From the IMG/VR virus record IMGVR_UViG_3300046517_002304, positions 1-64,000 of that record: a DNA stretch of 64,000 nucleotides, one strand, 5' to 3'. The position numbers and the translations under genes were made by a program. The notes beneath the pieces were generated by a model. It ran no database searches. It was not told where the DNA came from and was given only the letters and a program-made list of their open reading frames with translations. How positions within the stretch are numbered: position 1 is the stretch's first letter; each line of letters begins with the position of its first letter. Of the stretch, positions 1 through 55,690 are shown piece by piece.

Positions 1-313
1 AAAAAAACGACTCATCTGATGGATACAGACATTCAATCTGATTTTCACGAAACAACCAATTGTACCTCGGGTCGTAAAGACATCCTAGCTTAACCGACGA
101 ATTAAAATACTTAAACTGCGCAGCAACATTGGCGCAACCACCCAACTTACAAACAGGAACATCATCTAATGAATGAAGAACCGGAAATGGGCCTTCTGGC
201 GAAATTCTATTTACGCTCACATTCAAATACTCGTCTACCATAGTATCGCCAAGGCAAATAACGTCTATCTTTTTTTGACGATTAAACTCTAAAAATTTGG
301 ATAAAACAGTCAT
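1..313 (-). CDS. hldE: HldE/RfaE domain I, heptose-7-phosphate kinase (PfkB family); runs off the window edge
   Basis: Not in the ORF track. Manual translation from ATG 313: MTVLSKFLEFNRQKKIDVICLGDTMVDEYLNVSVNRISPEGPFPVL...KLGGCANVAAQ, matching the HldE GDxMLDxY..RISPEAPVPV..GGAANVA signature. Confidence 0.85.
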   Translation of the reverse strand, partial: MTVLSKFLEFNRQKKIDVICLGDTMVDEYLNVSVNRISPEGPFPVLHSLDDVPVCKLGGCANVAAQFKYFNSSVKLGCLYDPRYNWLFRENQIECLYPSDESFF

Positions 314-373
314 ATTGAGCTAGTAATAAAGGAAATTGTGTGCTATAATGTAGTACCAAGCAAGGGAAAAATC

Positions 374-1648
374 ATGAACAACATAGAAATCAAAGATTAT
401 CTAAAAACTAAAATTCCATTTGACGATTCAGCAAAAACCATTGATTTCAAGAAATCACACGGTTCTTTCCTAGTAGATGCTGACGGCACTGAATACCTAG
501 ACCTATGTACATCTTTCGGCTCCGGATCTATCGGGTATAATCACCCCAAGCTACGCGAAAAAATGATGGAACATTCAGAAGTATTTATCAACAAAATTTC
601 CAATGCAGACCTTTACAGCTCTATACAGGCCAACTTTATAAAGAAGCTTTTTCAAATATTGCCGTCTGGATTTGAAAAATGTTTTTTAGTCGATAACGGA
701 ACTAACGCTGTTGATGCTGCACTCAAAACATGCTTTGACTTCTACGCCAAGAAACATAATATTAAAGAAGAAGATATTAATAATTTAAATATCATATCCT
801 TCCAAAACGGATTTCATGGCAGATGCGGCATTCCTATTAGTTTAACCTGCACCGATATAAATAAAACAAAACTATACCCTAAACATAAATTCACAAAAAT
901 AACCCCTCCTGGCGTTCACCACCCAATAGATGTCAGAAAAGTTGAACAACTAGAAGCAATAAGCTTAAACGAACTAGAAAACGCGCTATTTTCAGGTGGC
1001 ATTGTAGCGGTTATAATGGAGCCGCTACTCAGTGAAGGCGGAAATATCATACTTAGAAAAGAATATCTCCAAAAAGTCAGAGACATGACAGAGAGATATG
1101 GAACATTTTTAATCTTTGACGAAGTTCAAACATTCGCTATGACAGAAAAATTCTGGCTGTCAGAATATTACGGGGTTATACCAGACATCATATGTTTTGG
1201 TAAAAAGCTTCAAATTTCTGGATTTGCCGTCAATTCAAAAATTAATGAAGTACCAAATAACGTCTTCGTAGAAAAAAGTAGAATATCTAGCACCTTCTGC
1301 GGGTCAACGGCAGACATGCTAAGAGCTACATTTATATTAGAAATCATCCAAGAAGAAAATTTACTTGCCAATGCACAAAATCAAGGCGAATATATCGTCA
1401 ACAAAATAACCGAATTAAGCCAGAAATACAAGTCAATAACAAACATACGAGGGATTGGATTTCTAATTGGGTTTGACCTACCTACCGCCGATATGAGAGA
1501 TGCCCTTGCCAAGGAATTAAATAAACAGTTATTTATACTAACTTGCGGAAAACAATCAATACGATTAAGGCCGTTCCTAAACATGTCTAGAAATGAATGT
1601 AATACATTTCTCGGTGTTCTTGAATTTGCTCTTAACAATACTATCTAA
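374..1648 (+). CDS. lat: L-lysine 6-aminotransferase (class III PLP aminotransferase)
   Basis: FHGR, DEVQT and PDIICFGKK (PLP lysine) motifs; SRISSTFCGSTADMLRA resembles Lat. Start moved to ATG 374; TGcTATAAT extended -10 at 341-349. Confidence 0.8.
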   Translation: MNNIEIKDYLKTKIPFDDSAKTIDFKKSHGSFLVDADGTEYLDLCTSFGSGSIGYNHPKLREKMMEHSEVFINKISNADLYSSIQANFIKKLFQILPSGFEKCFLVDNGTNAVDAALKTCFDFYAKKHNIKEEDINNLNIISFQNGFHGRCGIPISLTCTDINKTKLYPKHKFTKITPPGVHHPIDVRKVEQLEAISLNELENALFSGGIVAVIMEPLLSEGGNIILRKEYLQKVRDMTERYGTFLIFDEVQTFAMTEKFWLSEYYGVIPDIICFGKKLQISGFAVNSKINEVPNNVFVEKSRISSTFCGSTADMLRATFILEIIQEENLLANAQNQGEYIVNKITELSQKYKSITNIRGIGFLIGFDLPTADMRDALAKELNKQLFILTCGKQSIRLRPFLNMSRNECNTFLGVLEFALNNTI

Positions 1649-1651
1649 AAA

Positions 1652-2533: not shown

Positions 2534-2588
2534 ATGATACTCCTAATGAAACGATAGAATAATATATCTAAGGTTGAATAAATATTAT

Positions 2589-3251: not shown

Positions 3252-3261
3252 AAAGAACAAA

Positions 3262-3630: not shown

Positions 3631-3634
3631 TTTA

Positions 3635-8129: not shown

Positions 8130-8134
8130 TATTT

Positions 8135-12292: not shown

Positions 12293-13135
12293 TCAGCATT
12301 TTAGTTCACATAACACTTTTTCAGGCGATGAACTAAAATAGTCCGCTTGGAAAACGCGATTATTAATATTTGTTCTCTTAACCCACGATGTCGTCATAGG
12401 GGCTAAACAAGGAAAATACATCATTAGCTGCCGAACGTTAAAGTTATCTGCAACACAAGATAAGCCTGACTGAAACCCAACAAAAAAGACAGAATTTCTT
12501 ATTATATAGCAAATATTACTAATGTAAGAGTCAATATAAACAGTATTATGGACGCCTTGTCTAGTCAATCTGTCTCCTATTTCAGATAGGACGTTTTTAT
12601 CATACCCTGCACCTACTAATATAATAGGCAGATTAAACCTGTCATATATCCCCTTAACCAACTTGTGCCATTGATCTGTATTCCAAAGGTCCGTTCTAGA
12701 GCGATTAGTTCCAGAAACAAAAGCCGTAAGATACCGCCCATAAGGAGTGGGGCAACAATCCGTTCTAATAGGAACGCAAATATCAATAGGATATTCTAAA
12801 TCTATTTCATCTAGCCTAGTTCCGGACTCAAGCCACCGATTCGCCGAATATTCAAATGCAAAGCGCCCTTTTTGATATAAATCAAATATGCCTTTAATAT
12901 CAGGCTTTAAGCCAGCCACTCTGTGATAATCTGCTTCAGAAACCTTTTTAAAACAAGACTTTCCTACCTGTGGCAAAAGCTTGACGAATTCCCCAGATCT
13001 GTGCTGTACGGCATCATCGGCTATGGTTAATATGTTAAAATTAATCTTATCAAAATATGGGGCAAACTTTTGATATATCCAAAATATATCCCCAATACCT
13101 TGAGGAACATCCAGAGTAATTTCAGCGCCAATCAT
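12293..13135 (-). CDS. GT9-like (heptosyltransferase-like) glycosyltransferase
   Basis: PQGIGDIFW start motif, W..DQW, LVGAGYD, FFVGFQSGLS; coupled to hldD. Confidence 0.65.
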   Translation of the reverse strand: MIGAEITLDVPQGIGDIFWIYQKFAPYFDKINFNILTIADDAVQHRSGEFVKLLPQVGKSCFKKVSEADYHRVAGLKPDIKGIFDLYQKGRFAFEYSANRWLESGTRLDEIDLEYPIDICVPIRTDCCPTPYGRYLTAFVSGTNRSRTDLWNTDQWHKLVKGIYDRFNLPIILVGAGYDKNVLSEIGDRLTRQGVHNTVYIDSYISNICYIIRNSVFFVGFQSGLSCVADNFNVRQLMMYFPCLAPMTTSWVKRTNINNRVFQADYFSSSPEKVLCELKC

Positions 13136-13920
13136 GCAATAAATATAGTCGGCGACCAGTTAAAAATATCTTTAGTCCTGGCGATATCAGCACAGGTATG
13201 AAACTGATATGTATCTTTGAATGGGCAATCAATATAGTCTGGGATAATGTTAGAATTATACAATCTATTACAGTAATTTATTATATTTTCAAAAGGGACG
13301 CTGACTCCGCTACCTAAATTAAATACTCCACTTGTTTGCACGCTTATAGCACTCTTAATACACTCGCATACATCATCAATATGAATAAAATCACGCTTAG
13401 GATTGCCTTTAAATAAAATAGGCGGTTGGCCATTCTTGATCATATTGTTAATCTGATGTACCATGGATGCCCTTTTACCCTTGTGCTCTTCGCCAATAAG
13501 CGACCAGACATTGGTAAACCTAAAACCAATACAAGAAACATCTTTGTCTCTAGTCCAAGATAATGTCCATCCCTCAAAGTTCTTTTTACTCTGAGCATAT
13601 GGGGTTAAACAATCATGAACTGCGCCCGATGATGCCCAAATAAACTTGCGACATCCTTTGCCATAATAATAATCAAACATTTCAATCGGCCAATAATAAT
13701 TAGCTCTCATCATGGCGTCATAATCTCGGCTCTGCGTATCATTGTTTGCCGCAAGATGTATCAATACATCTGCCTGTCCCGCATCTTGCCAGTGGATTAT
13801 AGGAACTGCACTTGGCTGCTCATTCAAATGCCCTGTGCCAACTACATCGTGTCTCTGACATAGTATTCTAGACAAATATGATCCTACAAATCCGGTGGCA
13901 CCAGTGATTAATATTCTCAT
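13132..13920 (-). CDS. hldD: ADP-L-glycero-D-manno-heptose 6-epimerase-like SDR
   Basis: TGATGFVG, YAQSK, RFTNVW..EEHKGKRASMV, KRDFIHIDDV and YQFHTCAD match HldD/RfaD-specific motifs. Confidence 0.8.
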   Translation of the reverse strand: MRILITGATGFVGSYLSRILCQRHDVVGTGHLNEQPSAVPIIHWQDAGQADVLIHLAANNDTQSRDYDAMMRANYYWPIEMFDYYYGKGCRKFIWASSGAVHDCLTPYAQSKKNFEGWTLSWTRDKDVSCIGFRFTNVWSLIGEEHKGKRASMVHQINNMIKNGQPPILFKGNPKRDFIHIDDVCECIKSAISVQTSGVFNLGSGVSVPFENIINYCNRLYNSNIIPDYIDCPFKDTYQFHTCADIARTKDIFNWSPTIFIA

Positions 13921-14612
13921 GATTTCTTAAAAACAAAACTCATTACACCGTCACGGCCCGCAAGGGTTTCTGCATCGCTCGTTTCTATCAGTTCAAAACC
14001 ATATTCGGTTACACAATAAATCAAGCCATTTTGAGTGAAGTACTGAAGGTGCTCGCCTGGCTTCTTATGCTTTGACGACACGATATCATGAATATCATTA
14101 AAAATAGGCATGCTTATAAAAAGATATCCATTTTTCCGTACTTGCCGCAATATCTCTTCTGGCTTTTGAAAGTGTTCAAAAACATCCCACAGTGTAATCC
14201 CATTAAATTCAAGAAGCGTTTGATCTTTACTTAGCTCTTTATAAATACCTCTATCTTTTAGCCACTTCACGCCACATGGGTTAATATCATACCCGAATGA
14301 CCTAACTCTTAACTTTTTAATAAATTCTCCGCAACCAATCCCTACATCTAAAACCAAATCCTGATCTGACATATACTTTTCAACTAAACTACAACGATAT
14401 TTATTTAAGGCAATGGCAGTAGGAGTGTGCTCTAGGTCTACATAATGCTTCCAGTAAGCATCTGAATATTCAATAACTTTGTTTCTATCAATTTGCCAAG
14501 CAACCCCTATTTCAGGAATACCTTCTATACCGTCTGTAATAGAAACTACTTTATCGCCATATATGCCCCGTTTCAATAAGTCAAACATGCGATAATATAG
14601 TTCATAGTTCAA
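13917..14612 (-). CDS. Class I SAM-dependent methyltransferase
   Basis: VLDVGIGCG, YDIN, LWDVFEH, EHLQYF. Confidence 0.8.
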   Translation of the reverse strand: MNYELYYRMFDLLKRGIYGDKVVSITDGIEGIPEIGVAWQIDRNKVIEYSDAYWKHYVDLEHTPTAIALNKYRCSLVEKYMSDQDLVLDVGIGCGEFIKKLRVRSFGYDINPCGVKWLKDRGIYKELSKDQTLLEFNGITLWDVFEHFQKPEEILRQVRKNGYLFISMPIFNDIHDIVSSKHKKPGEHLQYFTQNGLIYCVTEYGFELIETSDAETLAGRDGVMSFVFKKS

Positions 14613-15498
14613 TTTTATTTTTCAGGAATTCATACGATTTATGCGGAGCATAATAGATGTGCTTGTATTTAAAACAATGATCGTCTGTGCTCTTTATCAT
14701 TAGGCTAGGATAACTAAAAATTTTAGCCGCAACTACTGATAGAACAGAATTAACGCCGATATAGCCGCTAGATTTTTTTAATATCTCCATGGCTTCAACT
14801 ATAGATGTTTGATTTGATAAATCTATTAAGTTTTTGCTGCCCGCAGGAATTAAATCAGGGCCAAGATTTAAAACAACCCCGCTCATCTCTAATCTTTGCA
14901 ACGATATAATAGTATTTTCCCAGTCACCTTTATCAAAATCCCTAGACGCAATTCTCTTATCACTAGAATATGGGCAAATTACCATGTATTTTTCTGGTAG
15001 TCCAAAATCAGAAACATTACATAACTGATTACTTAAAATGCTTGAATCATTATACTTGAGATACCCGGACGTAATGCGGGAAAACTTCGGACTGATGCTC
15101 CAGTCATCAGCATCAGACAGCCCTTGAGGAATATTCATTTTCTTAGTTTTTAAATGAACCATAACCTCATCTTTGGTAAAGAAGCACCAGAATTTAGAAA
15201 AATCATCATAAACTATAACATGATTTTTGAGCTTTGGAAAATTAGAAAGCCTTTTGAAAACTTCCATAATATGCTTGCTTTTATTAGTCGCATAATATAT
15301 CGTGTCCAGATTTTCTCTTTCATAATGAGAAAAATAGCTTTCTAAAGCAAGAACATCCCCAATTCCACCCGTCAGTAAAATACCACCAGACGATTCTTTA
15401 AATACTCTGGCAGGAGCATTAAATACTCTTTCTTTAATAAGCCGCTGATTACGGCTTTTAATTAAATATTGATTTCTTTCACTAAAGTTAAATGGCAT
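14602..15498 (-). CDS. GT9-like glycosyltransferase (paralog of 54842..55690)
   Basis: GGIGDVLALES, VICPYSS..RDF, DLSNQTSI.EA.EILK..GYIGVNS. Confidence 0.7.
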   Translation of the reverse strand: MPFNFSERNQYLIKSRNQRLIKERVFNAPARVFKESSGGILLTGGIGDVLALESYFSHYERENLDTIYYATNKSKHIMEVFKRLSNFPKLKNHVIVYDDFSKFWCFFTKDEVMVHLKTKKMNIPQGLSDADDWSISPKFSRITSGYLKYNDSSILSNQLCNVSDFGLPEKYMVICPYSSDKRIASRDFDKGDWENTIISLQRLEMSGVVLNLGPDLIPAGSKNLIDLSNQTSIVEAMEILKKSSGYIGVNSVLSVVAAKIFSYPSLMIKSTDDHCFKYKHIYYAPHKSYEFLKNKIEL

Positions 15499-17506
15499 AA
15501 TGCAAGTTTTTAGCTTCGCTGACAACTGATGCGGCAATCTCATCAGAGCAATTCAAAGCAATCTTAACCTTATTTATATTAGTGGAAATATCTTTAAGAG
15601 TCCTAAGTCCAGCAGTCCACAGTTTATTAGCCTTTACCCTGCCTATTCCGCTTAGCTTGACTATATCAACCATTTCAAATGGCACGCCATAATTTATCCT
15701 GGCTCTCAGTTGTTCTAGCCACATATGCCGGTTCCACATACCATGCATACGATTTATAGCAGATAAAACTTCTAGCGTTCGGCTAAAATCATATTGCAAC
15801 CCTCTCATGGGAGCGCTCAATATAGGATTCTCTTTTCCCTGTAATAAAAGATGGTAACAATACCCTACCTTAATTACCGATGCATTGTGCATATCAAAAT
15901 TAACCTTTTTTCGCCGCAATATATTAACATAGCCATCAGCTTCATCTACTTCCATTCTACTAGCAATGCCGCAGCGGTGGGTATCAATATTTGATAGCGC
16001 AATAGTTAGCCAATAATCATCTTGCTCTTTTTCGTTTTTAAAAAGGTGATCAAAATTAAAATATAAGTTAGAAACATCATATGGAGAATAGTAATACATG
16101 CTAGATATCTTGCCTAGCTGCGTCAAAGTATATGTGCCACTCTCTTCTTTCAATATACTACACTTTTTTAAACTATCCAGCATATTGTATATAAAATTAC
16201 TATCTAGTCTTAAGTTCTGATGATGAGAAAGCGTTTCTTTGAACCAATTATTTAACTCAGTCCTATTTGTTATGTTACCATGATGAATTTCGCTAACAAT
16301 ATGAAAGGCTAAATTTTTAAACGTTTCGTTCTTACCAACTAAGGATGACATAACATCAGGAGGATTATTAATTCTATATTTCCAATCTTCTATTTTACTA
16401 TCTGGCAATAGAACGTAAGCATCCCCTTCGTCTGACCCGTATCCTTTTCGGCCAGCTCTACCCATAGAATTTAAAATAGCGCTCACTTCCACTTCTGATA
16501 ATCCCCGATGAACTCCTAATACTATAACACCCTTAGCAGGCGTATTAACTCCAGCGGATAACGTTGATGTGGCAACCAGAACTTTCAAGCTATCACTATC
16601 TCTAAACTCATTTTCTATTTTAATCCTATCAGCTTTAGCTAAATCGGCAGTGTGATATTTGGCAACTATCCCCTCGGACGCTAGCTTCTTTAGCATTGCC
16701 AGTCCTGTTTTCTTACCATGCACAAATATAATGAATTTATCATTTAAGTTTTTCTTGATTATCTCAAGAGCCTTCTTCATTTTGGTCTCTTCTTTTTCTT
16801 CATATCTCCCTTTATCGCGATATGGAGTAAAGTACTTATTCAATTTACACGGACGATAATCAGACCTTAAAACATAAGTATCTCTACCCGTTATATTGCT
16901 AATCCAATTCCCTATTTCTTTATGATTTGGCATAACAGCAGATAAGGCCACAATCCTTGCCTTAGGATTAAGTTTCAAGAAATTCAATAGCCCAACCTCA
17001 ATGTGACTCCCACGAGACTCATCTCCCAACATATGAAATTCATCAATCACCAATGTCACATCGCCATTCAAAAAATCAGATTTATCTGACCGCGCCCTTG
17101 ACAGGGAGTTAAGAATTTCGTATGTCATGATAATAATATCGGCTTCCGCTAACTCTTTTTTTCTATCAGACGTAATCTGATAGTCTCCGGTACATATAGA
17201 CACTTTTAAGTCAGAAAAATGATGGTCTGATGATCGCCATTCATCAAACTTCTCTTGGGAGAGCGCCTTCATCGGCGATAAGTATATTCCTTTACCGCCA
17301 TGCTGCCTTATCGTGCTAGCGATATACATTTCCGCTATGGCAGTTTTACCAGCACTCGTATTCGCAGATATCAAGCAATTTTCTGGTTTATCAAAAACAG
17401 AAAATACTGCGCTCTGCACAGGATTAAAATGCTCGAATGAAAAACGACCGAACTTAAACTGTTCGGTCGAAATAATATCTTTAGATTCCGCAATTTCAAT
17501 AATCAA
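15488..17506 (-). CDS. Hel308/Ski2-like SF2 helicase with C-terminal HhH
   Basis: FNPVQ, TSAGKT, PMKAL, DEFH, LSA, TLSAGVNTPA, MGRAGR, GIGRVKA. Confidence 0.88.
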   Translation of the reverse strand: MIIEIAESKDIISTEQFKFGRFSFEHFNPVQSAVFSVFDKPENCLISANTSAGKTAIAEMYIASTIRQHGGKGIYLSPMKALSQEKFDEWRSSDHHFSDLKVSICTGDYQITSDRKKELAEADIIIMTYEILNSLSRARSDKSDFLNGDVTLVIDEFHMLGDESRGSHIEVGLLNFLKLNPKARIVALSAVMPNHKEIGNWISNITGRDTYVLRSDYRPCKLNKYFTPYRDKGRYEEKEETKMKKALEIIKKNLNDKFIIFVHGKKTGLAMLKKLASEGIVAKYHTADLAKADRIKIENEFRDSDSLKVLVATSTLSAGVNTPAKGVIVLGVHRGLSEVEVSAILNSMGRAGRKGYGSDEGDAYVLLPDSKIEDWKYRINNPPDVMSSLVGKNETFKNLAFHIVSEIHHGNITNRTELNNWFKETLSHHQNLRLDSNFIYNMLDSLKKCSILKEESGTYTLTQLGKISSMYYYSPYDVSNLYFNFDHLFKNEKEQDDYWLTIALSNIDTHRCGIASRMEVDEADGYVNILRRKKVNFDMHNASVIKVGYCYHLLLQGKENPILSAPMRGLQYDFSRTLEVLSAINRMHGMWNRHMWLEQLRARINYGVPFEMVDIVKLSGIGRVKANKLWTAGLRTLKDISTNINKVKIALNCSDEIAASVVSEAKNLHYAI

Positions 17507-27071: not shown

Positions 27072-27104
27072 AAATTTATCATAGCGAAAGCAGCTAAATA
27101 TTGC

Positions 27105-30016: not shown

Positions 30017-30730
30017 TTACCTACAATGCAAAAACATATTGTGTTTTAGCTCAAAATTATGCTCACATTTTTGTCCATTTAGATAAACTTCATATCCGTT
30101 AGAATACAAAATGTCTAACAGCTCCTGCGGATCAAAGCCGTGATACTCCATACTGACCTTTTCAAAAAGATGTGTTTCAATTTCCAGCTTCGGCTTCTTC
30201 TTAAGCATCTCTTTAGCTCCACGCAATACGGCTATTTCATATCCCTCAACGTCAATTTTAATAACATCTGGTGCAATCCCCAAATCATCTAAAGCTATAG
30301 TTTCTACTTCGGTTCCACGGCTATCAACCATTTCTTCAGATATAAACTTCTTCATCCCGCTTTTTTCATCTGCTATATTACTGTATATCTGATAATCTAT
30401 AACGTCATTTAGCTGAAAATTACGCTTTATAATAGGAATATTGCTTGGATTAGCTTCAATAACTATAATTTTAGACTTAGACCGCATTACCATGCTTAGG
30501 GCAACGCTTCCTATGTTGGCGCCTACATCTATAACAACATCGCCAGGAGAAATCAAATCTCTTAAAAAAAGGTTTCTTTTATTCTGAACTTCAACAGCAT
30601 CATCCCAAGAACATTTTAAATCATCGCAAATAGTTTTTAGACCATACCAGTTTTCATCACGATCATTGGATATGCAAAGCTTAAACCAATTATCCCAAAC
30701 TTTATGATGCTCAATATACGGGTATACCAT
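30017..30730 (-). CDS. FkbM-family methyltransferase
   Basis: IDVGANIG, IEAN, IKIDVEGYE.AVLRGA. Confidence 0.9.
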   Translation of the reverse strand: MVYPYIEHHKVWDNWFKLCISNDRDENWYGLKTICDDLKCSWDDAVEVQNKRNLFLRDLISPGDVVIDVGANIGSVALSMVMRSKSKIIVIEANPSNIPIIKRNFQLNDVIDYQIYSNIADEKSGMKKFISEEMVDSRGTEVETIALDDLGIAPDVIKIDVEGYEIAVLRGAKEMLKKKPKLEIETHLFEKVSMEYHGFDPQELLDILYSNGYEVYLNGQKCEHNFELKHNMFLHCR

Positions 30731-30767: not shown

Positions 30768-31367
30768 ATGGTAGCCGAAATACAAAAATTAATAGAATCC
30801 TGTGCCAAAACAGAAGATGATATTCTTTCTTTGGTTAAAAATCCAATAGACGATGGCGTGGACTGGCTTGGAAAGGGAACTTACATAGCATACTATGCCA
30901 TAGGGCAATATTTAAGACCAAAAAGCATAGTAGAAATAGGGGTAAGATATGGATATTCCCTAGAATCAATGAGGCGAGGAAGTGGTGAAACCAAACACAT
31001 TTTCTGCTTTGACAACGAGCAAGATTGCCTAGGATCTGGCGAATACGTATTCAATAAATTAAAAGACGTAGAACTTGAGACTTTAGATGTAATCAACGCA
31101 AACACACAAGCGATCAATTCATTAAACATCAATATGAAAATAGACTTAGGGCATATTGACGGATGTCATACCTTTGACGGAGTCTATCACGATTGCATAC
31201 TTGTTTCAAAGGTTATGAAAAGAAACGGGGTTATCTTAGTAGATGATGTTCTACATGGCAAAGATAGCGATGAAGTGAGATGGGGCGTAGATAAATTTTG
31301 CTGGGAGCGCGATATTAAACCAATGGTAATTGAGTGCCATAGAGGGCTATACGTAATTCAACTTTAG
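30768..31367 (+). CDS. Methyltransf_24 family methyltransferase
   Basis: VEIGVRYGYS, HIDGCH, VDDV. Confidence 0.85.
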   Translation: MVAEIQKLIESCAKTEDDILSLVKNPIDDGVDWLGKGTYIAYYAIGQYLRPKSIVEIGVRYGYSLESMRRGSGETKHIFCFDNEQDCLGSGEYVFNKLKDVELETLDVINANTQAINSLNINMKIDLGHIDGCHTFDGVYHDCILVSKVMKRNGVILVDDVLHGKDSDEVRWGVDKFCWERDIKPMVIECHRGLYVIQL

Positions 31368-32332
31368 CCAAAATTAGCAGGATACCCTTCACGAATAAAC
31401 CAAGTCAAAGCTTCACTTACAGTTGGCCTTACCATAGTTTTAAAATTGTCATAAGCCATATCCATGGGATCAGCAATATTATCTTGCATGCTTTTAAGAA
31501 TTCTAGGTAGTAAAAAAATCGTTGGGACGTTAAGATTGTTCGCCAGAAGACCTACCCCACCCGGAAATTGAAATGAAAACTTACACCTTTTAAGACACGC
31601 TAGGGTAATGCCTAAGTGTTTTCCTACTACCATTTCTGTCTTGCAGCCTCTAGACTTCATAATTTCATATACATCCTTAGTGCGGTCGTAATCCCAAGAT
31701 GCTCCTGAAAATAAAAATGAATAATTCCTACACTCTGGTATATTATGCACACCGGTTAAAAACTCAACCCACTCATCGGTATTCCAAATGTTCCATCCTG
31801 GTCTTACCTGTCGATCTTTTTCTTTATTAGAAACAAAGCAAAAAAAGGTATTCGGACCTAATCTTTGCATTATGCTATCTGCTTCATGATAATGTTCTTG
31901 CGGTATATTTATAGGATAATGCCAATCAAGCGGCAATTTAGGAAGCCAATCCGAAAGCTTCTTACTCCGCTCAAGCCATAAATTACATGAAAGATTAATC
32001 TTCCAAGGTTTTCCACAAAGATAATCGTATTTGCCATTACAATCGGCCCAATCATCCCCCAGACAATTTTGCATAACCTCAAAGCTTGTAACAGAATCAT
32101 CATATCCAGCCCAACGAACATTAGGCGATAATAACTGAACAAATTCTTCTGCTCGCCTTAATTCATTCTTGGATGCTACTGATAATAAAATTTCACGACC
32201 AAGCTTTTGTTTAAGGTTAAATATCTTGGCTATTGCCCAATGTATATCTCCCATTCCGGCACAGCACCTAAACTGAATTACATTATGGACCCCAAAATCT
32301 TCGGGGCGATATACTTTTGTATCTACAGGCAT
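31364..32332 (-). CDS. GT9-like glycosyltransferase (divergent)
   Basis: AGMGDIHW, WNTDEW, GASWD, PGGVG; paralog of 12293 and 32994. Confidence 0.55.
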   Translation of the reverse strand: MPVDTKVYRPEDFGVHNVIQFRCCAGMGDIHWAIAKIFNLKQKLGREILLSVASKNELRRAEEFVQLLSPNVRWAGYDDSVTSFEVMQNCLGDDWADCNGKYDYLCGKPWKINLSCNLWLERSKKLSDWLPKLPLDWHYPINIPQEHYHEADSIMQRLGPNTFFCFVSNKEKDRQVRPGWNIWNTDEWVEFLTGVHNIPECRNYSFLFSGASWDYDRTKDVYEIMKSRGCKTEMVVGKHLGITLACLKRCKFSFQFPGGVGLLANNLNVPTIFLLPRILKSMQDNIADPMDMAYDNFKTMVRPTVSEALTWFIREGYPANFG

Positions 32333-32335: not shown

Positions 32336-32992
32336 CTAGCTCCTTATCTTAGAAGACTCGCATCTACTAGAATTTCTAACCACAATCCAGTAACAATGAT
32401 TTTTTCTTAAGTGCTTAACATTATTCCATTTACTAGACTGTAAATTTCCCGCTGACGGGTCGCATTTAATTAACAGGTCACAAGGCGTCATACCAACTTC
32501 TAGGGTAGCATTAACAAAATCCACATGCTGCCATTGGTATCTATGATTATGGACAATATCTGCAATCTTAGCCAAAACAATTCCATTCTTATTTAAAACT
32601 CTTTTCGCTTCTTTTAAAAATGGAATAAACATACCGCTTACATTATCTCCTTCTCTACCTTCGCCGTCAGATGTTATGCCATATGATTTTTCCCAAATTT
32701 TAGAACTGTTCTCAGATGCCGCATTTGTGGGAAGATGTGGAGGGTCAAAAACAATAATATCATATGAGCCATCGGCAAATGGTATAGCGGTAAAATCGGC
32801 CACAACGTCTAAAGACAAATCTGGATTAATATCCATTCTAGTCGGCGCATAGGATGATCCAATCCACATCTTTCCAGAGTTATAGGTAACGTCTAATATT
32901 TTAGGATTTGCTACGGAACTGTGCACTTCTATTAATATCCTAATAGCTTCTACATCACGTCCATTTAGAACAGTCTTATAGCGCTTAGACAT
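32336..32992 (-). CDS. Phage SAM-dependent (probable DNA amino-) methyltransferase
   Basis: ILDVTYNSGKMW, IVFDPPHL, EAKRVL..G. Confidence 0.7.
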   Translation of the reverse strand: MSKRYKTVLNGRDVEAIRILIEVHSSVANPKILDVTYNSGKMWIGSSYAPTRMDINPDLSLDVVADFTAIPFADGSYDIIVFDPPHLPTNAASENSSKIWEKSYGITSDGEGREGDNVSGMFIPFLKEAKRVLNKNGIVLAKIADIVHNHRYQWQHVDFVNATLEVGMTPCDLLIKCDPSAGNLQSSKWNNVKHLRKNHCYWIVVRNSSRCESSKIRS

Positions 32993-32993
32993 A

Positions 32994-33983
32994 TTACCAA
33001 CCATTATCCTTTATAAAATTTAAAATTTCATTCACGCCATGCCGACCATAGTAGCACGGAAAATATGTCTTGCCTGTAACGGAACCGGGCTTAGTCCAAG
33101 CAAATGCCATATCCTCATGAAAAGCAATATAATGTTCGTAACTTATGCTATCGTCATGATTCTTAGGAGTGCGTTTTTGTCTCCACCACATAGCCGTTTT
33201 TGTTCCCATATAATTAGCACAAACTCCAAGTCCAGACTGGTAACTAATCATAAATCTAGCATTTTTAATTACAGCAAGAGTATGCTCGATAGGCCATTGG
33301 CTAATGAAGTTCTTCCACCATAATTTCATTTTAGTTTTAGGTCTAATATTATTGTTATAATACTCTAAATCCCAATCTGCTCCCACAACAATAATTTTAA
33401 CTCCATACGCCTCATGGAGTCTATCGCCTAAATCTACCCATTCTTGGGCAGTAAAAATTAGCCCTCTATTATGACCAGAATGAGAGCAATTTCCACCCTC
33501 TCCGGCTATAAAGAAAATAACATACTCGCCCATAGTATCTTTAAATTTATTTGTGTACTCTTTTTCAGCATCTAACCAATTAAACTCATTGAATATTTCA
33601 AAATTAGATTCAACGTCTGGCAACCAGTCCGAAAGATTAATTCCTCTTTCCAGCGGTGCATTCGGCATCATTACGAAGTCAATATTTTTTAAAGATGGAT
33701 TTTTACCATCAGGAATATATCTATACAGACCATCTTCTGTAGCGAGAGGCCCTTCAAGTAAAACTGGACCATGCCTATTGACATGTGGCATAACATATGG
33801 TTCTACAGAATTAACAAATTTAAATTTTCTTAAGAACTCAATCGCACGACTTTCTATGTTATTAGCATTCCAGACGCCGACCTTCAAATCAATCCTGTTA
33901 TCGCCGTGCTTCTTAACAAGACCTTGTGCTTTAACTAAGCACCATACAGAATCGCCCACGCCTTGAGGAACAAGTATGTTCAT
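32994..33983 (-). CDS. GT9-like glycosyltransferase
   Basis: PQGVGDSVW, VVGADWD, FMISYQSGLG. Confidence 0.6.
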   Translation of the reverse strand: MNILVPQGVGDSVWCLVKAQGLVKKHGDNRIDLKVGVWNANNIESRAIEFLRKFKFVNSVEPYVMPHVNRHGPVLLEGPLATEDGLYRYIPDGKNPSLKNIDFVMMPNAPLERGINLSDWLPDVESNFEIFNEFNWLDAEKEYTNKFKDTMGEYVIFFIAGEGGNCSHSGHNRGLIFTAQEWVDLGDRLHEAYGVKIIVVGADWDLEYYNNNIRPKTKMKLWWKNFISQWPIEHTLAVIKNARFMISYQSGLGVCANYMGTKTAMWWRQKRTPKNHDDSISYEHYIAFHEDMAFAWTKPGSVTGKTYFPCYYGRHGVNEILNFIKDNGW

Positions 33984-44943: not shown

Positions 44944-45516
44944 TTATGGTTTACCGAGACTCAAGGCTCTAACGCCCCATCCTAAGTATATGCCATAGGT
45001 GATTCGTTCCGCGTCAAGCATAAGCATATTGGTTGCCTTAAGCCAACTATTGATAATTTCAATGGTAATTGGTCGCTCATGCGCCTTTGACACACCGGAT
45101 ACATGTTCCGCCGACTCATTTTGAGCATCTAACGAACGATTGTCTTCTGGACATGTTATAATTAAAATTCCGCCTGGTTTTAATACGTTTCTTGTATTTG
45201 TGATTATTGTTTTAGCATCTTCATCACTAAAGTGTTCTAGTATATCTCCTAAAACAGCGACATCTGCGGTCGCATTAAATGGGAATGGTAATCTAGCATC
45301 GTGAATAATATCGGCTTGAGTTGGGCAATCATTGGCTCCAGACCATTGATTTATATCAATGTTGATAGCTTGAAAGTCATACTTTAATAAGCCGCAGTCA
45401 ATGTCGCATCCGATATTAAGAATCCTTTGCCCTTTTTGAAGGTACTTTCTTTGGAAGACATATTGATGTAGTTGGCGGCAGACTTCTAGTTTTGCGGCAG
45501 CTTCTTCTGGCGTCAT
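44944..45516 (-). CDS. Class I SAM methyltransferase (Methyltransf_11-like)
   Basis: ILNIGC, NIDI, LPF, DILEH, VLKPGG.LIITCP. Confidence 0.85.
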   Translation of the reverse strand: MTPEEAAAKLEVCRQLHQYVFQRKYLQKGQRILNIGCDIDCGLLKYDFQAINIDINQWSGANDCPTQADIIHDARLPFPFNATADVAVLGDILEHFSDEDAKTIITNTRNVLKPGGILIITCPEDNRSLDAQNESAEHVSGVSKAHERPITIEIINSWLKATNMLMLDAERITYGIYLGWGVRALSLGKP

Positions 45517-52964: not shown

Positions 52965-53309
52965 TTACAGGGAATTCGTTTGAATTGTGTCTTTGCCGGC
53001 TAGATTATGCATTGTTTCAGCAGTTTGGTCAATAGCACCTTTCAAATCTTCGCTGGTATCGATAGATTTTAGTATAAAAACGGCAACCTTTTGAAGCTCT
53101 TTAAGCGTGCTGGTATCAGAATCGTCCCAATCGTCGTTTAATATTTTACGAATCTCATTGGCGATATTTGTAGCTGTTTTGATAATCTGCCTACTGCCCA
53201 TTTGAGCAGCATCATTTTGCAAAGAATCTATCGCATTTACGATTGGACCGATACGGTCGTTTAAGATTTTCTTTTGTTCGTTCAAGACGAACTTTTTGAA
53301 GCGTGTCAT
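52965..53309 (-). CDS. Helical protein with capsid-targeting-like N-terminus
   Basis: MTRFKKFVLNE; TATATA-N4-ATG. Confidence 0.7.
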   Translation of the reverse strand: MTRFKKFVLNEQKKILNDRIGPIVNAIDSLQNDAAQMGSRQIIKTATNIANEIRKILNDDWDDSDTSTLKELQKVAVFILKSIDTSEDLKGAIDQTAETMHNLAGKDTIQTNSL

Positions 53310-53326
53310 ACGATATATATGGTAGC

Positions 53327-54025
53327 ATGGAAAACGAAAAAAATCAAGACCACATTGAAATGGCTTTATTCAGAGCTGGACCTTTGCATCCTTACAGGCT
53401 TAAAATTGAAAAAATGCTCAAGGATTTACCGGTAAAAACTGGCGACATTTTGTTTCGGCTGGATGGATACGTGTTTTGGGGATTGTTCAATTTTAGCGAA
53501 ACTGTATGCACTTTAACAAAATCAAATTTTGATCATGCTGCCGTAGTTTACGTAGAAAACGAAATTCCGATGGTGGTAGAAATAAGTGACCAGGGATGTA
53601 CTTTGTTTCGCCTTGTAGATTGGGCAGATTATGTTTTTGCTTCCACTTTTTCCGTTTACAGACTAAAGACCGGACTGGATACTGACGCCAATATAGCAAA
53701 ATTGCAGGAGTCTGTCAAGACTCTTATTGCCAGCGATCCAGATTATGATTTTTCGTTCGGTAATGAAAATGGTAAATTTTATTGCACAGAGTTTGTGGCA
53801 AAGGTTTATGAAGATGCTGGTTTGCCTTTAATGAAACCCATGTTAATAAAAGACATTATGGGTGGCGGCTGGAGATACTGGCTATTTTATGCAATAAACA
53901 AATTAGCTGGAAAAATTACTGGAATGTGTTTTAACGCGGAGACTCCGATGTATTTTGTTGGTAACAATAAACAAGGAATGATGTCATCGCCGCTAATTAG
54001 TTTGATGGCTAAGATTAGTTTCTAA
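53327..54025 (+). CDS. Permuted papain-like NlpC/P60 (YiiX/YebB-like) enzyme
   Basis: GDILFR, FDHAAV, YDF, FYCTEFV. Confidence 0.8.
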   Translation: MENEKNQDHIEMALFRAGPLHPYRLKIEKMLKDLPVKTGDILFRLDGYVFWGLFNFSETVCTLTKSNFDHAAVVYVENEIPMVVEISDQGCTLFRLVDWADYVFASTFSVYRLKTGLDTDANIAKLQESVKTLIASDPDYDFSFGNENGKFYCTEFVAKVYEDAGLPLMKPMLIKDIMGGGWRYWLFYAINKLAGKITGMCFNAETPMYFVGNNKQGMMSSPLISLMAKISF

Positions 54026-54826
54026 TAATCTACTTTCAGCTATATCGCAGTATTTTTGTTCCAAGTCAATTCCGATGTATTGTCTGCCAGCATTTTTTGC
54101 AGCAACGCATGTAGTTCCCGATCCGCAAAATGGGTCTAAAATAATATCGCCGATGAAAGATGCTAATTTTATACATCTATGAGGTATCTCTAATGGAAAC
54201 GGTGCAGGATGCCCAAATTTGTTTTTTCCCATAGCTGGTGGTACGGCCCAAATTTGCATTCCATAAGACTTGAATTCTTCTGGAGTTAGCGCAGATTGCT
54301 TTCGTAAATCATCAGTTACATCTTTTCTTGTTCCTGATTTGCGGAACCATAAGATATACTCTACTTCTTGCACTAGAGGGATTTCGCCGGGTGAATGGAA
54401 GCGGCCATATGACCCGAGTAGACGGTTAGAACCACCTGATGCATGCGATCCTCTAATCTTTTTCCACAAGACAATTTCTTTGTAATCTAAAGCATTGCGT
54501 AAATGCATAATTAAATGTGCATGAGACGGCAAGACTATATTTTTCCCTAAGTTTTTTAAGCTTGTATGTCTGTCGTCAATGTTAATTACTAATTTTCCTG
54601 CTGGCTTTAATATTCTGACGCATTCATCAAAAATTGAACAAAGCCATGAGATATAAATGTTCCATTCACCAACGACATCTTTGCTTTTGGCATCGCCACC
54701 TTGATGGTAGTCTAATGTCTGTATAAAATATGGAGGACTAGTAATCACCATGTTCACACATTCATTGGGCATTTTCTTTAATATTTCTAGGGAATCTCCG
54801 CATATAATTTTGTTAGTTTCTAGCAT
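53993..54826 (-). CDS. Beta-class N4C/N6A DNA methyltransferase
   Basis: TSPPY, HPAPFP, LDPFCGSGTT. Confidence 0.92.
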   Translation of the reverse strand: MLETNKIICGDSLEILKKMPNECVNMVITSPPYFIQTLDYHQGGDAKSKDVVGEWNIYISWLCSIFDECVRILKPAGKLVINIDDRHTSLKNLGKNIVLPSHAHLIMHLRNALDYKEIVLWKKIRGSHASGGSNRLLGSYGRFHSPGEIPLVQEVEYILWFRKSGTRKDVTDDLRKQSALTPEEFKSYGMQIWAVPPAMGKNKFGHPAPFPLEIPHRCIKLASFIGDIILDPFCGSGTTCVAAKNAGRQYIGIDLEQKYCDIAESRLLETNLSHQTN

Positions 54827-54841
54827 GTACTATAATAGTTC

Positions 54842-55690
54842 GTGAACATTTTTATATCAGGCGGCATAGGCGATTTCATAGCATTAGAGTCTCATTTTTC
54901 CGATGAGATGCGGAGTGAATTAAAGACAGTATACCTTGCTAGCAGGGCCAATAAAGAAATAGCCGAACTCATTAATGCCGTTTATCCTAATGTTAAATGT
55001 GAAATTGTGTGGAGTGACTTTACTAAATTTCCTTGTTTCTTTAGCATAGATGATTTTAAATTAGCTGGTGGAAGTATTTCTGATGATGTAGAAGATTGGA
55101 GCATAATGGCCAAGTTCAATCTAGGTGAAATTACTAGAATGAGTATTCCAGGCCAGTCTCCATTAGAAATATTGCATGAGTTTCAGAGAAAAAATAAATT
55201 ACTTTCAGAATATAATGGCTCTAGTTTTTTGAAGAATAGATTGTGTAATTTACCTGAAAAGTTAGATTGTTATAATGATTTTATAAGAAGATGGAGTAAT
55301 AGAAGTAGAGATACTTTGCTTAATGATTACGTAGTTATTTTTCCTTATACTGGCACCCCTACTACTTCCGCAGGTAGAAATTTTAATGACATAGACTGGA
55401 AATACGTAAAAACTGTAAATAAAAAGGCTATTGTACTCGGAAACCTTTTTAATCAGCCAATCCCGCCTTTAGCCTTTAATGTAAAAACGACAATACCAGA
55501 GTCTATTGAAATATTAAAGGGCGCATCCGGGTATATCGGCATTGATTCATTCTTATCAGTGCTTGCCGCTAAGTTATTTGAATACCCTAATCTAAAAGTT
55601 AAAAGTATCAATCCACATTGCTATAATGCTAAACACATTTATTATGCGCCGCAAACTAATTTTGAATTTTTAAAGGAAAGTATATGCTAG
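54842..55690 (+). CDS. GT9-like glycosyltransferase (paralog of 14602..15498)
   Basis: GGIGDFIALES, GYIGIDSFLSVLAAKLF, HIYYAP. Confidence 0.7.
   Translation: MNIFISGGIGDFIALESHFSDEMRSELKTVYLASRANKEIAELINAVYPNVKCEIVWSDFTKFPCFFSIDDFKLAGGSISDDVEDWSIMAKFNLGEITRMSIPGQSPLEILHEFQRKNKLLSEYNGSSFLKNRLCNLPEKLDCYNDFIRRWSNRSRDTLLNDYVVIFPYTGTPTTSAGRNFNDIDWKYVKTVNKKAIVLGNLFNQPIPPLAFNVKTTIPESIEILKGASGYIGIDSFLSVLAAKLFEYPNLKVKSINPHCYNAKHIYYAPQTNFEFLKESIC

What the first reader, a model, noticed from the sequence alone, without database searches (positions are those of the whole stretch)
1..55690. Dispersed phage-encoded ADP-heptose glycosylation system with five GT9-like transferases, partly interleaved with DNA methyltransferases
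Seen: an HldE kinase (1-313, missed by the ORF track); an HldD-like epimerase (13132) in a coupled run with a methyltransferase and two GT9-like genes; three more GT9-like paralogs (31364, 32994, 54842) forming two subfamilies (GxGDxxW and GGIGDxxALES); a GT2; and FkbM/Methyltransf_24/11 enzymes. A DPPH methyltransferase lies between the GT9s at 31364 and 32994, and the GT9 at 54842 is flanked by two beta-class DNA MTases. Known: HldE and HldD make ADP-L-glycero-D-manno-heptose, which GT9 enzymes transfer onto the LPS core, and related enzymes heptosylate proteins. Inference: the phage builds a methylated multi-heptose glycan on the virion, on host LPS (superinfection exclusion) or, more speculatively, on DNA.
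Basis: partly seen in the sequence, partly recalled or inferred. Interest (0 to 1): 0.8.

Follow-up and report, generated by a model that had tools for sequence, protein, structure and literature searches.

The report
Huge-phage ADP-heptose glycosylation gene set
A 511-kb uncultured phage carries the two enzymes that make ADP-heptose, five very diverged phage-only relatives of bacterial heptosyltransferases and several sugar-type methyltransferases, which together look like a pathway for a methylated heptose glycan whose target (most likely phage protein, not DNA) is still unknown.

Summary
The window is the first 64 kb of a 511-kb IMG/VR phage contig.

- **Donor enzymes:** the fragment at 1-313 lies on the minus strand. 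It is the start of a complete 473-aa bifunctional HldE. The gene at 13132 is HldD-like and keeps its catalytic residues.
- **Conserved core:** in about 27 related phage contigs the recurring partner is a GT9-like gene next to, or fused with, a Methyltransf_23 enzyme. HldD or HldE is often nearby.
- **DNA methyltransferases:** adjacency is above chance in this window (P about 0.005) but is not conserved in relatives. The DPPH methyltransferase belongs to a highly conserved, widespread family.
- **Departures from GT9:** only one of the five paralogues keeps all three catalytic residues known from WaaC.
- **Distribution:** both subfamilies look phage-restricted. Relatives sit in glycan clusters with sulfo-, pyruvyl- and mannosyltransferases.

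Best reading: a soluble, phage-specific pathway that builds a methyl-decorated heptose glycan, probably on phage proteins. Host LPS remodelling is the main rival and DNA glycosylation is unlikely. The acceptor is untested. gmhA and gmhB were not found in the sequence I could see.

The parts
1..313 (-). First 104 codons of hldE (bifunctional heptose-7-P kinase / heptose-1-P adenylyltransferase). The rest lies beyond the left edge, at the other end of the contig.
   Evidence: Frame found. The full 473-aa gene with PfkB + CTP_transf_like is present on L001 and on a 59-kb contig. NCBIfam HldE scores 1e-65, rfaE_dom_I 5e-37 and rfaE_dom_II 5e-38, all below the equivalog cut-offs.
14602..15543 (-). 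GT9-like transferase B (subfamily 2, motif GGIGDxxALES), first gene of the coupled run. It has Asn where WaaC has Asp261.
   Evidence: 37% identical to E. Orthologues in 17 related contigs, usually followed by Methyltransf_23. Residue check.
13917..14612 (-). SAM-dependent methyltransferase (Methyltransf_23), the conserved partner of both transferase subfamilies. Probably an O-methyltransferase acting on the glycan.
   Evidence: Pfam 3.8e-12 and phrog_6564 1e-50. Adjacent or fused to the transferase in 14 related contigs. Fusion proteins P0062, P0321 and P0329. Weak PDB match to UbiG O-methyltransferase.
13132..13920 (-). HldD-like ADP-heptose 6-epimerase. It is shortened (262 aa, against 310 in E. 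coli).
   Evidence: TIGR02197 9e-39, below its cut-off. 26% identity to E. coli HldD at 1e-26, with the Ser/Tyr/Lys triad and the second Lys conserved. Found within 10 kb of the transferase in 7 related contigs.
12293..13135 (-). GT9-like transferase A (subfamily 1, motif QGIGDxxW), last enzyme of the coupled run.
31364..32332 (-). GT9-like transferase C (subfamily 1). It has Pro at the WaaC Asp261 position.
   Evidence: blastp to A 4e-14. It has its own orthologue next to an A-type gene in L008/L027 (1.5e-71). Residues.
32994..33983 (-). GT9-like transferase D (subfamily 1).
   Evidence: blastp to A 1e-7 and to C 1e-5. Orthologue in L013 (3e-64). Weak TIGR02195 heptosyltransferase II hit at 0.013.
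54842..55690 (+). GT9-like transferase E (subfamily 2), the only paralogue with all three WaaC-type catalytic positions (Asp, Arg for Lys, Asp).
30017..30730 (-). FkbM-type methyltransferase, a probable second glycan methyltransferase.
   Evidence: PF05050 4e-17. A Methyltransf_24 + Methyltransf_21 fusion lies beside an sf1 transferase and an RGP-like gene in L002.
30768..31367 (+). Methyltransf_24 (class I O-methyltransferase-like), converging on transferase C.
   Evidence: PF13578 2e-14. Homologues near transferases in L002 and L011.
27048..27830 (+). Possible GT2-like protein. Uncertain, so membership in the system is not established.
   Evidence: PF13704 8.5e-4, below its cut-off. No PHROG hit and no PDB hit.
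44944..45516 (-). Small class I methyltransferase (Methyltransf_23/11). A possible further member, not linked by context.
   Evidence: PF13489 5.6e-7 and PF08241 8e-6.
32336..33004 (-). DPPH-motif methyltransferase between D and C. A neighbour, probably a DNA (amino) methyltransferase and not part of the glycan pathway.
   Evidence: phrog_24333 'DNA methyltransferase' 3e-24. Motif. 412 homologues, 57-79% identity in the 120 listed. Unrelated to the Methyltransf_23 partner. Not found beside transferases in relatives.
53993..54826 (-). N6/N4 DNA methyltransferase flanking E. A neighbour, not part.
   Evidence: PF01555 4e-43. Only one distant homologue within 10 kb of a transferase in 32 related loci.
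55684..56424 (+). N6/N4 DNA methyltransferase overlapping the end of E by 7 nt. A neighbour, not part.
   Evidence: PF01555 3.5e-34. The adjacency is not conserved.

Best explanation
This is a phage-encoded cytoplasmic glycan-building pathway based on ADP-heptose.

- **Donor supply:** HldE phosphorylates and adenylylates D-glycero-D-manno-heptose phosphate. The isomerase and phosphatase steps presumably come from the host, or from genes outside the sequence I could read. The HldD-like enzyme then converts ADP-D,D-heptose to ADP-L,D-heptose.
- **Transfer:** five soluble, minimal GT-B transferases add sugars one after another to a phage-specified acceptor. They come from two old, phage-restricted offshoots of family GT9, and each has its own orthologues in other phages.
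- **Decoration:** the Methyltransf_23 enzyme methylates or caps the product. It is the constant partner of these transferases and is sometimes fused to them. FkbM and Methyltransf_24 enzymes probably add further methyl groups.
- **Acceptor:** most likely phage (virion) protein.
- **DNA methyltransferases:** those lying next to three of the transferases are independent, mobile genes.

Shown here: the enzyme identities at fold or family level, the operon-like coupling, the conserved co-occurrence and the fusions. Inferred: the donor sugar, the order of steps, methylation of the glycan, and the acceptor.
For: **Donor enzymes**
- HldE is complete and has both domains.
- The HldD-like gene keeps its catalytic residues and sits inside the transferase operon.

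**Fold and residues**
- GT9 structures are the closest for both subfamilies. ESM Atlas neighbours are GT9 clusters.
- The catalytic Asp equivalent to WaaC D13 is invariant in both subfamilies, and the ribose-binding acid (WaaC E222) is invariant in sf1.

**Conserved linkage**
- Transferase + Methyltransf_23 occurs in 14 of about 27 related contigs, HldD in 7 and HldE in 2.
- One 37-kb contig carries, co-directionally, mannosyltransferase, GT9, GT9, sf1 transferase, Methyltransf_23 and HldE.
- Fusion proteins include GT9 + sf1 + Methyltransf_23, sf2 + Methyltransf_23, and sf1 with a sulfotransferase or a Maf-like domain.

**Complex glycan context**
- One relative lies among sulfotransferases, a pyruvyl transferase, a cytidylyltransferase, a Maf-like protein and a mannosyltransferase.

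**Phage-specific acceptor**
- Atlas clusters are 75-100% viral.
- The sf1 profile finds 1211 representative clusters.
- Motif scans of 185,579 cellular genomes found no relative.
- Identity to WaaC/WaaF is only 9-15%.

**Soluble enzymes**
- No hydrophobic segment is present in any of them.

**Precedent for protein acceptors**
- TibC is among the structural matches.
- An 'Aah/TibC' protein from an uncultured phage appears in BFVD.
- Virus-encoded GT-GT-methyltransferase enzymes that build capsid glycans are known from chlorovirus A064R (my own knowledge).
- Virion glycosylation is known in mycobacteriophages (Freeman et al. 2023, as cited in PMC12801897).
Against: - No acceptor was identified. 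No structural gene lies beside the transferases in the window, which is a replication and nucleotide-metabolism region.
- Four of the five paralogues lack the Asp equivalent to WaaC D261: Gln in A and D, Pro in C, Asn in B. Subfamily 1 also lacks a fixed Lys192 equivalent. In WaaC, D261A costs about 2000-fold in activity and K192A about 900-fold (PMC5713226). Some paralogues may therefore use another donor or be weak enzymes.
- No gmhA or gmhB was found in the window or in related loci. A search with E. coli GmhA did not reach this contig.
- HldE and HldD score below NCBIfam equivalog cut-offs.
- The Methyltransf_23 substrate is unknown.
Confidence: 0.45

Rival explanations
1. The system remodels the host envelope. 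The phage transferases add (methyl-)heptose to the host LPS core or to another lipid-linked glycan during infection. This would change the receptor and block superinfection or progeny loss. HldE and HldD would act as auxiliary metabolic genes that keep ADP-heptose available.
For: - The canonical role of GT9 is heptosylation of the LPS inner core, and WaaF and WaaC are the closest structures.
- A heptosyltransferase in another huge phage has been interpreted this way (PMC10747093).
- WaaC and WaaF also lack membrane anchors, so the solubility of the phage enzymes does not argue against this reading.
Against: - Both subfamilies look phage-restricted and are far from any cellular GT9. A recently captured host gene would look different.
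- The proteins are 40-60 residues shorter than WaaC/WaaF, and key residues differ.
- Five paralogues, fusions to methyl- and sulfotransferases, and tandem GT9 megaproteins suggest a dedicated product rather than a tweak of a conserved core.
- The host is unknown.
Confidence: 0.25
2. The GT9-like enzymes glycosylate phage DNA, for example on a hydroxymethylated pyrimidine. They would work alongside the neighbouring DNA methyltransferases to evade restriction.
For: - Three of the five transferases touch a DNA methyltransferase in this window (P about 0.005 by chance). Two of these junctions overlap, as in coupled genes.
- The genes sit among replication genes.
- Phage GT-B enzymes that put mono- and di-heptose on 5hmC have been shown (bioRxiv 10.1101/2023.12.21.572611).
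Against: - The adjacency is not conserved. No related locus has a DNA methyltransferase directly beside the transferase. D12 enzymes lie 1-8 kb away, and only in syntenic huge phages.
- The DPPH methyltransferase is a highly conserved, widespread family.
- The window has no C5-methyltransferase, TET/JBP-type oxygenase or dNMP hydroxymethylase.
- Known DNA heptosyl GTs resemble T4 beta-GT. T4 beta-GT is not among the top 50 structural matches of either model.
- The transferases have near-neutral pI.
- Relatives sit in clusters with sulfo- and pyruvyl-transferases typical of glycans.
Confidence: 0.08
3. The association with heptose is loose. The GT9-like proteins transfer other sugars, or some are inactive scaffolds. 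HldE and HldD would serve an unrelated purpose, such as sustaining host LPS synthesis or feeding the RGP-like enzyme.
For: - The Asp261 equivalent is lost in four of five paralogues and Lys192 in sf1.
- Many related contigs show transferase + methyltransferase without HldD or HldE within 10 kb.
- hldE is coupled to an RGP-like (UDP-arabinopyranose-mutase-like) gene rather than to a GT9-like gene.
Against: - HldD sits inside the transferase operon here and in six other contigs.
- HldE follows transferase + methyltransferase in a co-directional string on another contig.
- The catalytic base and the nucleotide-binding positions are conserved.
Confidence: 0.12

Closest known systems
LPS inner-core heptosyltransferases WaaC (HepI) and WaaF (HepII), CAZy GT9 / Pfam PF01075
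   Same: - Two-Rossmann GT-B fold, with these structures as the best matches for both subfamilies.
- N-terminal Gly-Asp catalytic base.
- Ser/Thr-rich phosphate loop and an acidic ribose-binding residue.
- ADP-heptose-making genes in the same genome and operon.
   Different: - 9-15% identity and no hit to PF01075.
- 40-60 residues shorter.
- The Asp261 equivalent is replaced in four of five paralogues, and Lys192 is Arg in sf2 or absent in sf1.
- The families appear phage-restricted.
- Constant partnership or fusion with a methyltransferase.
Bacterial autotransporter heptosyltransferases TibC / Aah (BAHT)
   Same: A GT9-type fold that uses ADP-heptose on a protein acceptor in the cytoplasm. 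TibC is among the structural matches.
Virus-encoded capsid glycan machinery (chlorovirus PBCV-1 A064R, a GT-GT-methyltransferase; mycobacteriophage virion glycosylation)
   Same: Viral, soluble, multi-transferase sets with a sugar methyltransferase. Fusion architectures of the type GT + GT + methyltransferase occur among relatives.
   Different: These systems use different transferase families and donors (rhamnose or hexoses, not heptose). No link to capsid genes is shown here. The comparison rests on my own knowledge and on the citation in PMC12801897.
Phage DNA sugar hypermodification clusters (T4 alpha/beta-GT; 5hmC glycosylation clusters of Burke et al., bioRxiv 10.1101/2023.12.21.572611)
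   Same: Phage GT-B enzymes lying next to DNA methyltransferases. Heptose has been found on 5hmC in one such cluster.
   Different: Those clusters pair the transferase with a C5-methyltransferase and a TET-like oxygenase, and they use a cytidylyltransferase route. Their transferases resemble T4 beta-GT. Here the methyltransferases are N6/N4 and D12 types, no oxygenase is seen, and the fold is GT9.
Chain-terminating methyltransferases of O-antigen synthesis (E. coli O8/O9a WbdD)
   Same: A SAM-dependent methyltransferase tightly coupled to the glycosyltransferases that build a glycan. This suggests a capping role for the Methyltransf_23 partner (my own knowledge).
   Different: No sequence relationship was shown, and WbdD also has a kinase domain. 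This is an analogy only.

Membership tests
GT9 heptosyltransferases (CAZy GT9, Pfam PF01075) | GT-B fold closest to WaaC/WaaF | tested here: met
GT9 heptosyltransferases (CAZy GT9, Pfam PF01075) | Match to the PF01075 model above its gathering score | tested here: not met
   No Pfam hit for any of the five at E<=0.01. Only weak TIGR02195 hits for A (0.0077) and D (0.013). Some homologues and fusion partners do reach PF01075.
GT9 heptosyltransferases (CAZy GT9, Pfam PF01075) | Catalytic base Asp13 (WaaC numbering) | tested here: met
   The Gly-Asp in the first strand-loop is invariant in both alignments and present in all five paralogues.
GT9 heptosyltransferases (CAZy GT9, Pfam PF01075) | Lys192 near the anomeric carbon | tested here: inconclusive
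   Subfamily 2 has an invariant Arg at the same spacing before the conserved Trp. Subfamily 1 has no fixed basic residue there. The mapping is by sequence pattern, not by a superposed structure.
GT9 heptosyltransferases (CAZy GT9, Pfam PF01075) | Asp261 in the D(T/S)GL motif | tested here: not met
   Asp is kept only in E (and in nearly all other sf2 proteins). B has Asn, A and D have Gln (near-invariant in sf1) and C has Pro. The importance of D261 comes from PMC5713226.
GT9 heptosyltransferases (CAZy GT9, Pfam PF01075) | Use of ADP-L-glycero-D-manno-heptose as donor | not testable with these tools
   Supported only by gene linkage to HldD and HldE.
HldE (bifunctional heptose kinase / adenylyltransferase) | PfkB kinase domain followed by a cytidylyltransferase-like domain, matching the HldE model end to end | tested here: met
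   473 aa; NF008454 covers residues 11-464 at 1e-65. The score of 222 bits is below the equivalog cut-off of 521, so it is a diverged member. Only the first 104 aa lie in the window.
HldD (ADP-heptose 6-epimerase) | SDR fold with Ser/Tyr/Lys and the second catalytic Lys; best match to TIGR02197 | tested here: inconclusive
   The best family is TIGR02197 (9e-39), but 133 bits is below its 274.6 cut-off. The catalytic residues align with E. coli HldD. The protein is about 48 aa shorter.
Complete ADP-heptose pathway | GmhA isomerase and GmhB phosphatase present | tested here: not met
   No homologue of E. coli GmhA or GmhB in the window or in the related loci searched. The other 447 kb of the contig could not be read. 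A HAD/NIF phosphatase at 3602-4108 is unrelated to GmhB by sequence.
BAHT protein heptosyltransferases (TibC/Aah) | TibC N-terminal domain (PF21129) and a length of about 400 aa | tested here: not met
   No such domain was found. The proteins are 280-329 aa. The structural alignment covers only TibC residues 93-386.
Phage DNA glycosylation clusters | Adjacent enzyme that makes a hydroxymethyl or hydroxy pyrimidine (dNMP hydroxymethylase, or C5-methyltransferase + TET/JBP) | tested here: inconclusive
   None among the ORFs scanned with Pfam or PHROGs. About 20 shorter ORFs in the window were not scanned, several scanned ORFs have no annotation, and the rest of the genome is unseen.
Phage DNA glycosylation clusters | Conserved adjacency of the transferase and a DNA methyltransferase in relatives | tested here: not met
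   None of the 32 related loci has a DNA methyltransferase directly adjacent to the transferase.

The most novel reading that the evidence does not exclude
Two phage-restricted offshoots of the heptosyltransferase family, always paired with a methyltransferase, build a methyl-capped heptose oligosaccharide on virion proteins of huge phages. This would be the first heptose-based viral glycan and a new acceptor class for GT9-type enzymes. Some paralogues, with Gln, Pro or Asn in place of the heptose-binding Asp, would handle modified donors such as methylated or furanose heptose supplied by the RGP-like mutase homologue coupled to hldE.
Probability: 0.3. Interest if true: 0.75.

Novelty: new variant of a known kind. 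Interest (0 to 1): 0.55.

Why it matters
Heptosyltransferase-like genes in phage metagenomes are usually filed as host-derived 'LPS auxiliary genes'. This analysis shows that they form large, phage-only families: at least 1,200 sequence clusters for one subfamily. They have their own conserved partner, a methyltransferase, and their own donor-making genes.

If they decorate virions, they would affect adsorption, immune recognition and stability of huge phages. They would also add heptose to the short list of sugars that viruses attach to their own particles. If they act on LPS, they would be a new kind of receptor editing by lytic phages. Either way, the minimal 280-residue enzymes with altered catalytic residues are useful material for understanding donor and acceptor choice in GT9 enzymes.

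Tried and rejected
- **Direct family scans:** Pfam, PHROGs and NCBIfam scans of the five transferases gave nothing or only marginal hits. I had to go through homologue alignments and structure prediction.
- **Cultured relatives:** megablast of 20 kb against GenBank phages found no match. tblastn found only one uncultured 595-kb phage for E and nothing for A.
- **sf2 profile against PDB sequences:** no GT9 hit. Fold search was needed.
- **GmhA/GmhB:** the search with E. coli GmhA in IMG/VR returned only close relatives on other contigs. The phmmer search of all window and locus ORFs was negative. The rest of the contig could not be fetched.
- **Is the DPPH methyltransferase a sugar methyltransferase like the Methyltransf_23 partner?** Rejected. 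The two show no similarity, and the DPPH enzyme is a very conserved, widespread family annotated as a DNA methyltransferase.
- **Is the acidic Cys-rich protein downstream of A (11495-12292) a conserved acceptor?** Rejected. It has no homologue in any related locus.
- **Promoter and terminator scans:** both clusters were at chance level and say nothing about operon limits.
- **Cellular genome scans:** nothing found. One attempt failed for lack of a conserved stretch. These scans depend on short motifs, so absence is not proof.
- **Literature:** Freeman et al. 2023 could not be read.

Full report
**What the window is.** The 64-kb window equals positions 1-64000 of IMG/VR contig IMGVR_UViG_3300046517_002304, which is 511,233 bp long. 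Locus coordinates returned for window genes are identical to contig coordinates. A cluster record gives a longest contig of 511,254 bp. G+C content is about 37% and there are no tRNA genes. The gene content is that of a huge phage's replication and nucleotide-metabolism region:
- UvsX/RecA, a gp32-like protein and a DEAD helicase;
- DnaB, a split family-A polymerase, a second helicase and both ribonucleotide reductase subunits.

GenBank phages hold no close relative. The only tblastn hit is an uncultured 595-kb phage.

**Checking the observation.** All elements exist.
- The 'HldE' piece at 1-313 is on the minus strand and is the N-terminus of a gene cut by the contig end. Two other assemblies carry the gene whole: 473 aa with PfkB + CTP_transf_like domains. 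NCBIfam matches HldE end to end at 1e-65 and each domain model at about 1e-37, all below the equivalog cut-offs.
- The five 'GT9-like' ORFs fall into two subfamilies. In sf1, A (12293), C (31364) and D (32994) are 20-23% identical, with E values from 4e-14 to 1e-5. In sf2, B (14602) and E (54842) are 37% identical at 3e-49. The subfamilies are related only at profile level (hhalign E 1.8e-5).
- The run B / Methyltransf_23 / HldD-like / A (15543 to 12293, minus strand) has overlaps of 11, 4 and 4 nt.
- D, the DPPH methyltransferase and C form a second co-directional string. E is flanked by two N6_N4 methyltransferases, one overlapping it by 7 nt.
- FkbM and Methyltransf_24 genes lie next to C.
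- The 'GT2' at 27048 is marginal.

**Are they GT9?** No curated model recognises them. The evidence is indirect but consistent.
- An alignment of sf1 homologues finds WaaF (0.024), WaaC and TibC as its best PDB sequences.
- AlphaFold models are confident: pLDDT 94 for A and 87 for E.
- Several sf2 homologues carry PF01075, and JGI names two sf2 homologues and one sf1 homologue ADP-heptose:LPS heptosyltransferase.
- ESM Atlas neighbours are GT9 clusters that are almost entirely viral.

**Catalytic residues.** I used E. coli WaaC from the K-12 record and the three residues shown by mutagenesis to matter: D13, K192 and D261 (PMC5713226).
- The catalytic base (D13) is invariant in both subfamilies.
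- The ribose-binding acid (WaaC E222) is invariant as Asp in sf1.
- K192 is an invariant Arg in sf2 and is not fixed in sf1.
- D261 is kept in E and in nearly all other sf2 proteins. It is Asn in B, Gln in A and D (near-invariant across sf1) and Pro in C.

These proteins therefore share the GT9 fold and its base, but they fail two formal membership criteria: the family-model score and, for four of the five, D261. Their donor specificity cannot be taken for granted.

**What travels with them.** I fetched 32 loci around homologues from IMG/VR and other assemblies and searched their ORFs with the window's proteins.
- By far the most frequent companion is the Methyltransf_23 enzyme. It occurs in 14 of about 27 distinct contigs, for both subfamilies, usually abutting the transferase and sometimes fused to it (P0062; P0321 and P0329).
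- The HldD-like epimerase recurs in 7 contigs and HldE in 2.
- A further contig has a co-directional string: mannosyltransferase, GT9, 2OG oxygenase, radical SAM, GT9, sf1 transferase, Methyltransf_23 and HldE.
- Another relative sits among two sulfotransferases, a cytidylyltransferase, a Maf-like protein, Methyltransf_24, an epimerase, a polysaccharide pyruvyl transferase and a mannosyltransferase.
- A, C and D each have their own orthologues elsewhere (1e-64 to 1e-71). The paralogues are therefore old and presumably do different steps.
- The sf1 profile finds 1211 representative clusters in 1.84 billion proteins. Many are 500-1150-aa fusions with further GT9 domains, Methyltransf_23, a sulfotransferase or a Maf-like domain.
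- Motif-based scans of 185,579 cellular genomes found no member of either subfamily.

**The DNA methyltransferases.** The window holds four: 32336, 53993, 55684 and 58171. Three transferases touch one, which random gene order gives with P about 0.005. The adjacency is nevertheless absent in relatives. No locus has a DNA methyltransferase next to the transferase. A D12 enzyme lies 1-8 kb away only in closely syntenic huge phages. The DPPH enzyme has 412 homologues, and the 120 listed share 57-79% identity. This pattern fits a mobile orphan methyltransferase, and the enzyme is unrelated to the Methyltransf_23 partner. I read the adjacency as local genome history, not as a functional unit.

**Most likely mechanism.**
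1. HldE, with isomerase and phosphatase steps from the host or from unseen genes, makes ADP-D,D-heptose.
2. The HldD-like enzyme, whose catalytic residues are intact, makes ADP-L,D-heptose.
3. The five soluble transferases extend a glycan stepwise. None of the enzymes has a hydrophobic segment.
4. Methyltransf_23, and probably FkbM and Methyltransf_24, methylate it.

I favour phage proteins as the acceptor for four reasons. The families are phage-restricted and very far from host GT9. The GT9 fold is already known to act on proteins (TibC/Aah). Relatives are built into multi-enzyme glycan clusters and into GT-GT-methyltransferase fusions like those that build viral capsid glycans. The enzymes are cytoplasmic, where virion proteins are made. 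I put the pathway itself at about 0.75 and the full statement, including the protein acceptor, at 0.45.

**Rivals.**
- *Host LPS or envelope remodelling (0.25)* is the classical role of GT9 and cannot be excluded without knowing the host.
- *DNA glycosylation (0.08)* has a precedent for heptose on 5hmC. That system uses C5-methyltransferase + TET and a T4 beta-GT-like enzyme, neither of which is seen here. The near-neutral pI of the transferases and the glycan-type neighbours also argue against it.
- *A loose or absent link to heptose (0.12)* is kept alive by the substituted D261 position.

**Comparison with the known.** Heptosyltransferase-like genes in phage metagenomes have been noted and called LPS auxiliary genes (PMC10747093; UniProt names). 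I found no description of the following in the searched literature:
- two phage-restricted subfamilies;
- their constant methyltransferase partner;
- the operon with HldD;
- the altered catalytic residues.

I rate this a new variant of a known kind.

**Limits.** The acceptor, the donor and the methylation target are all inferred. Only 64 kb of 511 kb could be read. Residue mapping to WaaC is by sequence and profile alignment, not by structure superposition at residue level. Absence from cellular genomes rests on short-motif scans.

Noticed in passing
L001:921-1868 (minus strand; just left of window position 1, on the other end of the contig): A 315-aa RGP-family protein (PF03214) overlaps the end of hldE by 29 nt. 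It matches plant UDP-arabinopyranose mutase (PDB 8cid) at 1e-17. An orthologue (3e-102) lies beside a Methyltransf_24-FkbM fusion and an sf1 transferase in L002. It could be a pyranose-furanose mutase acting on the heptose nucleotide, or a further transferase.
   Followed up: partly
window 338-11486: A block of genes is syntenic with 664-kb and 122-kb phage contigs. The block holds:
- a lysine-6-transaminase-like aminotransferase;
- a trypsin-like protease;
- a thioredoxin;
- a NIF/HAD phosphatase;
- a subtilase;
- a phiEco32-type COOH-NH2 ligase;
- an alpha/beta hydrolase.

In the other phages it sits with glutamate dehydrogenase, AdoMet decarboxylase and a radical SAM/SPASM enzyme. This looks like a conserved peptide or metabolite modification module of this huge-phage clade.
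   Followed up: partly
59-kb Logan contig left of the window (no DNA held): PrkA kinase, DUF444 and SpoVR genes (the YeaG-YeaH-YcgB stress triad of bacteria) lie together a few kb beyond hldE in the phage genome.
   Followed up: no
window 11495-12292 (minus): The last gene of the transferase run encodes a 265-aa protein with pI 4.05. It has long Asp/Met-rich repeats and two Cys clusters. It has no family hit and no homologue in related loci.
   Followed up: partly
window 14602-15543 (transferase B): B alone among 39 aligned sf2 proteins has Asn instead of the conserved Asp in the IDS motif (WaaC D261 position). Its orthologues in other phages keep Asp. It may be weakened or have a changed specificity.
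   Followed up: partly
window 32336-33004: The DPPH methyltransferase belongs to a very conserved family. It has 412 homologues, the 120 listed share 57-79% identity, and they occur on contigs from 1 kb to 554 kb. Pfam barely recognises it.
   Followed up: partly
window 59117-60259: A LAGLIDADG homing endonuclease gene sits directly upstream of the ribonucleotide reductase small-subunit gene, overlapping it by 4 nt.
   Followed up: no
window 37925-40366: The family-A DNA polymerase appears split into two adjacent ORFs of 403 and 406 aa. Only the second matches the DNA_pol_A model.
   Followed up: no
window 18975-20027, 43496-44293, 48529-49890, 51673-52947, 53303-54025: Five enzymes unusual for a phage are scattered between the replication genes:
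- Amidoligase_2;
- a DDAH/amidinotransferase-like protein;
- an M16 insulinase-type peptidase;
- a class II glutamine amidotransferase;
- a C92 permuted papain-like amidase.
   Followed up: no
window 25246-25764 and 28613-29902: The phage encodes two chaperone-type proteins: a DnaJ-domain protein, and a 429-aa protein with an HSP20 domain.
   Followed up: no
L052:17668-17973 and L053:3193-3387: Related huge phages carry very short ORFs (64-101 aa) that hit the T4 Gp23 major capsid model. They lie inside the syntenic metabolic block, far too short to be a capsid protein.
   Followed up: no
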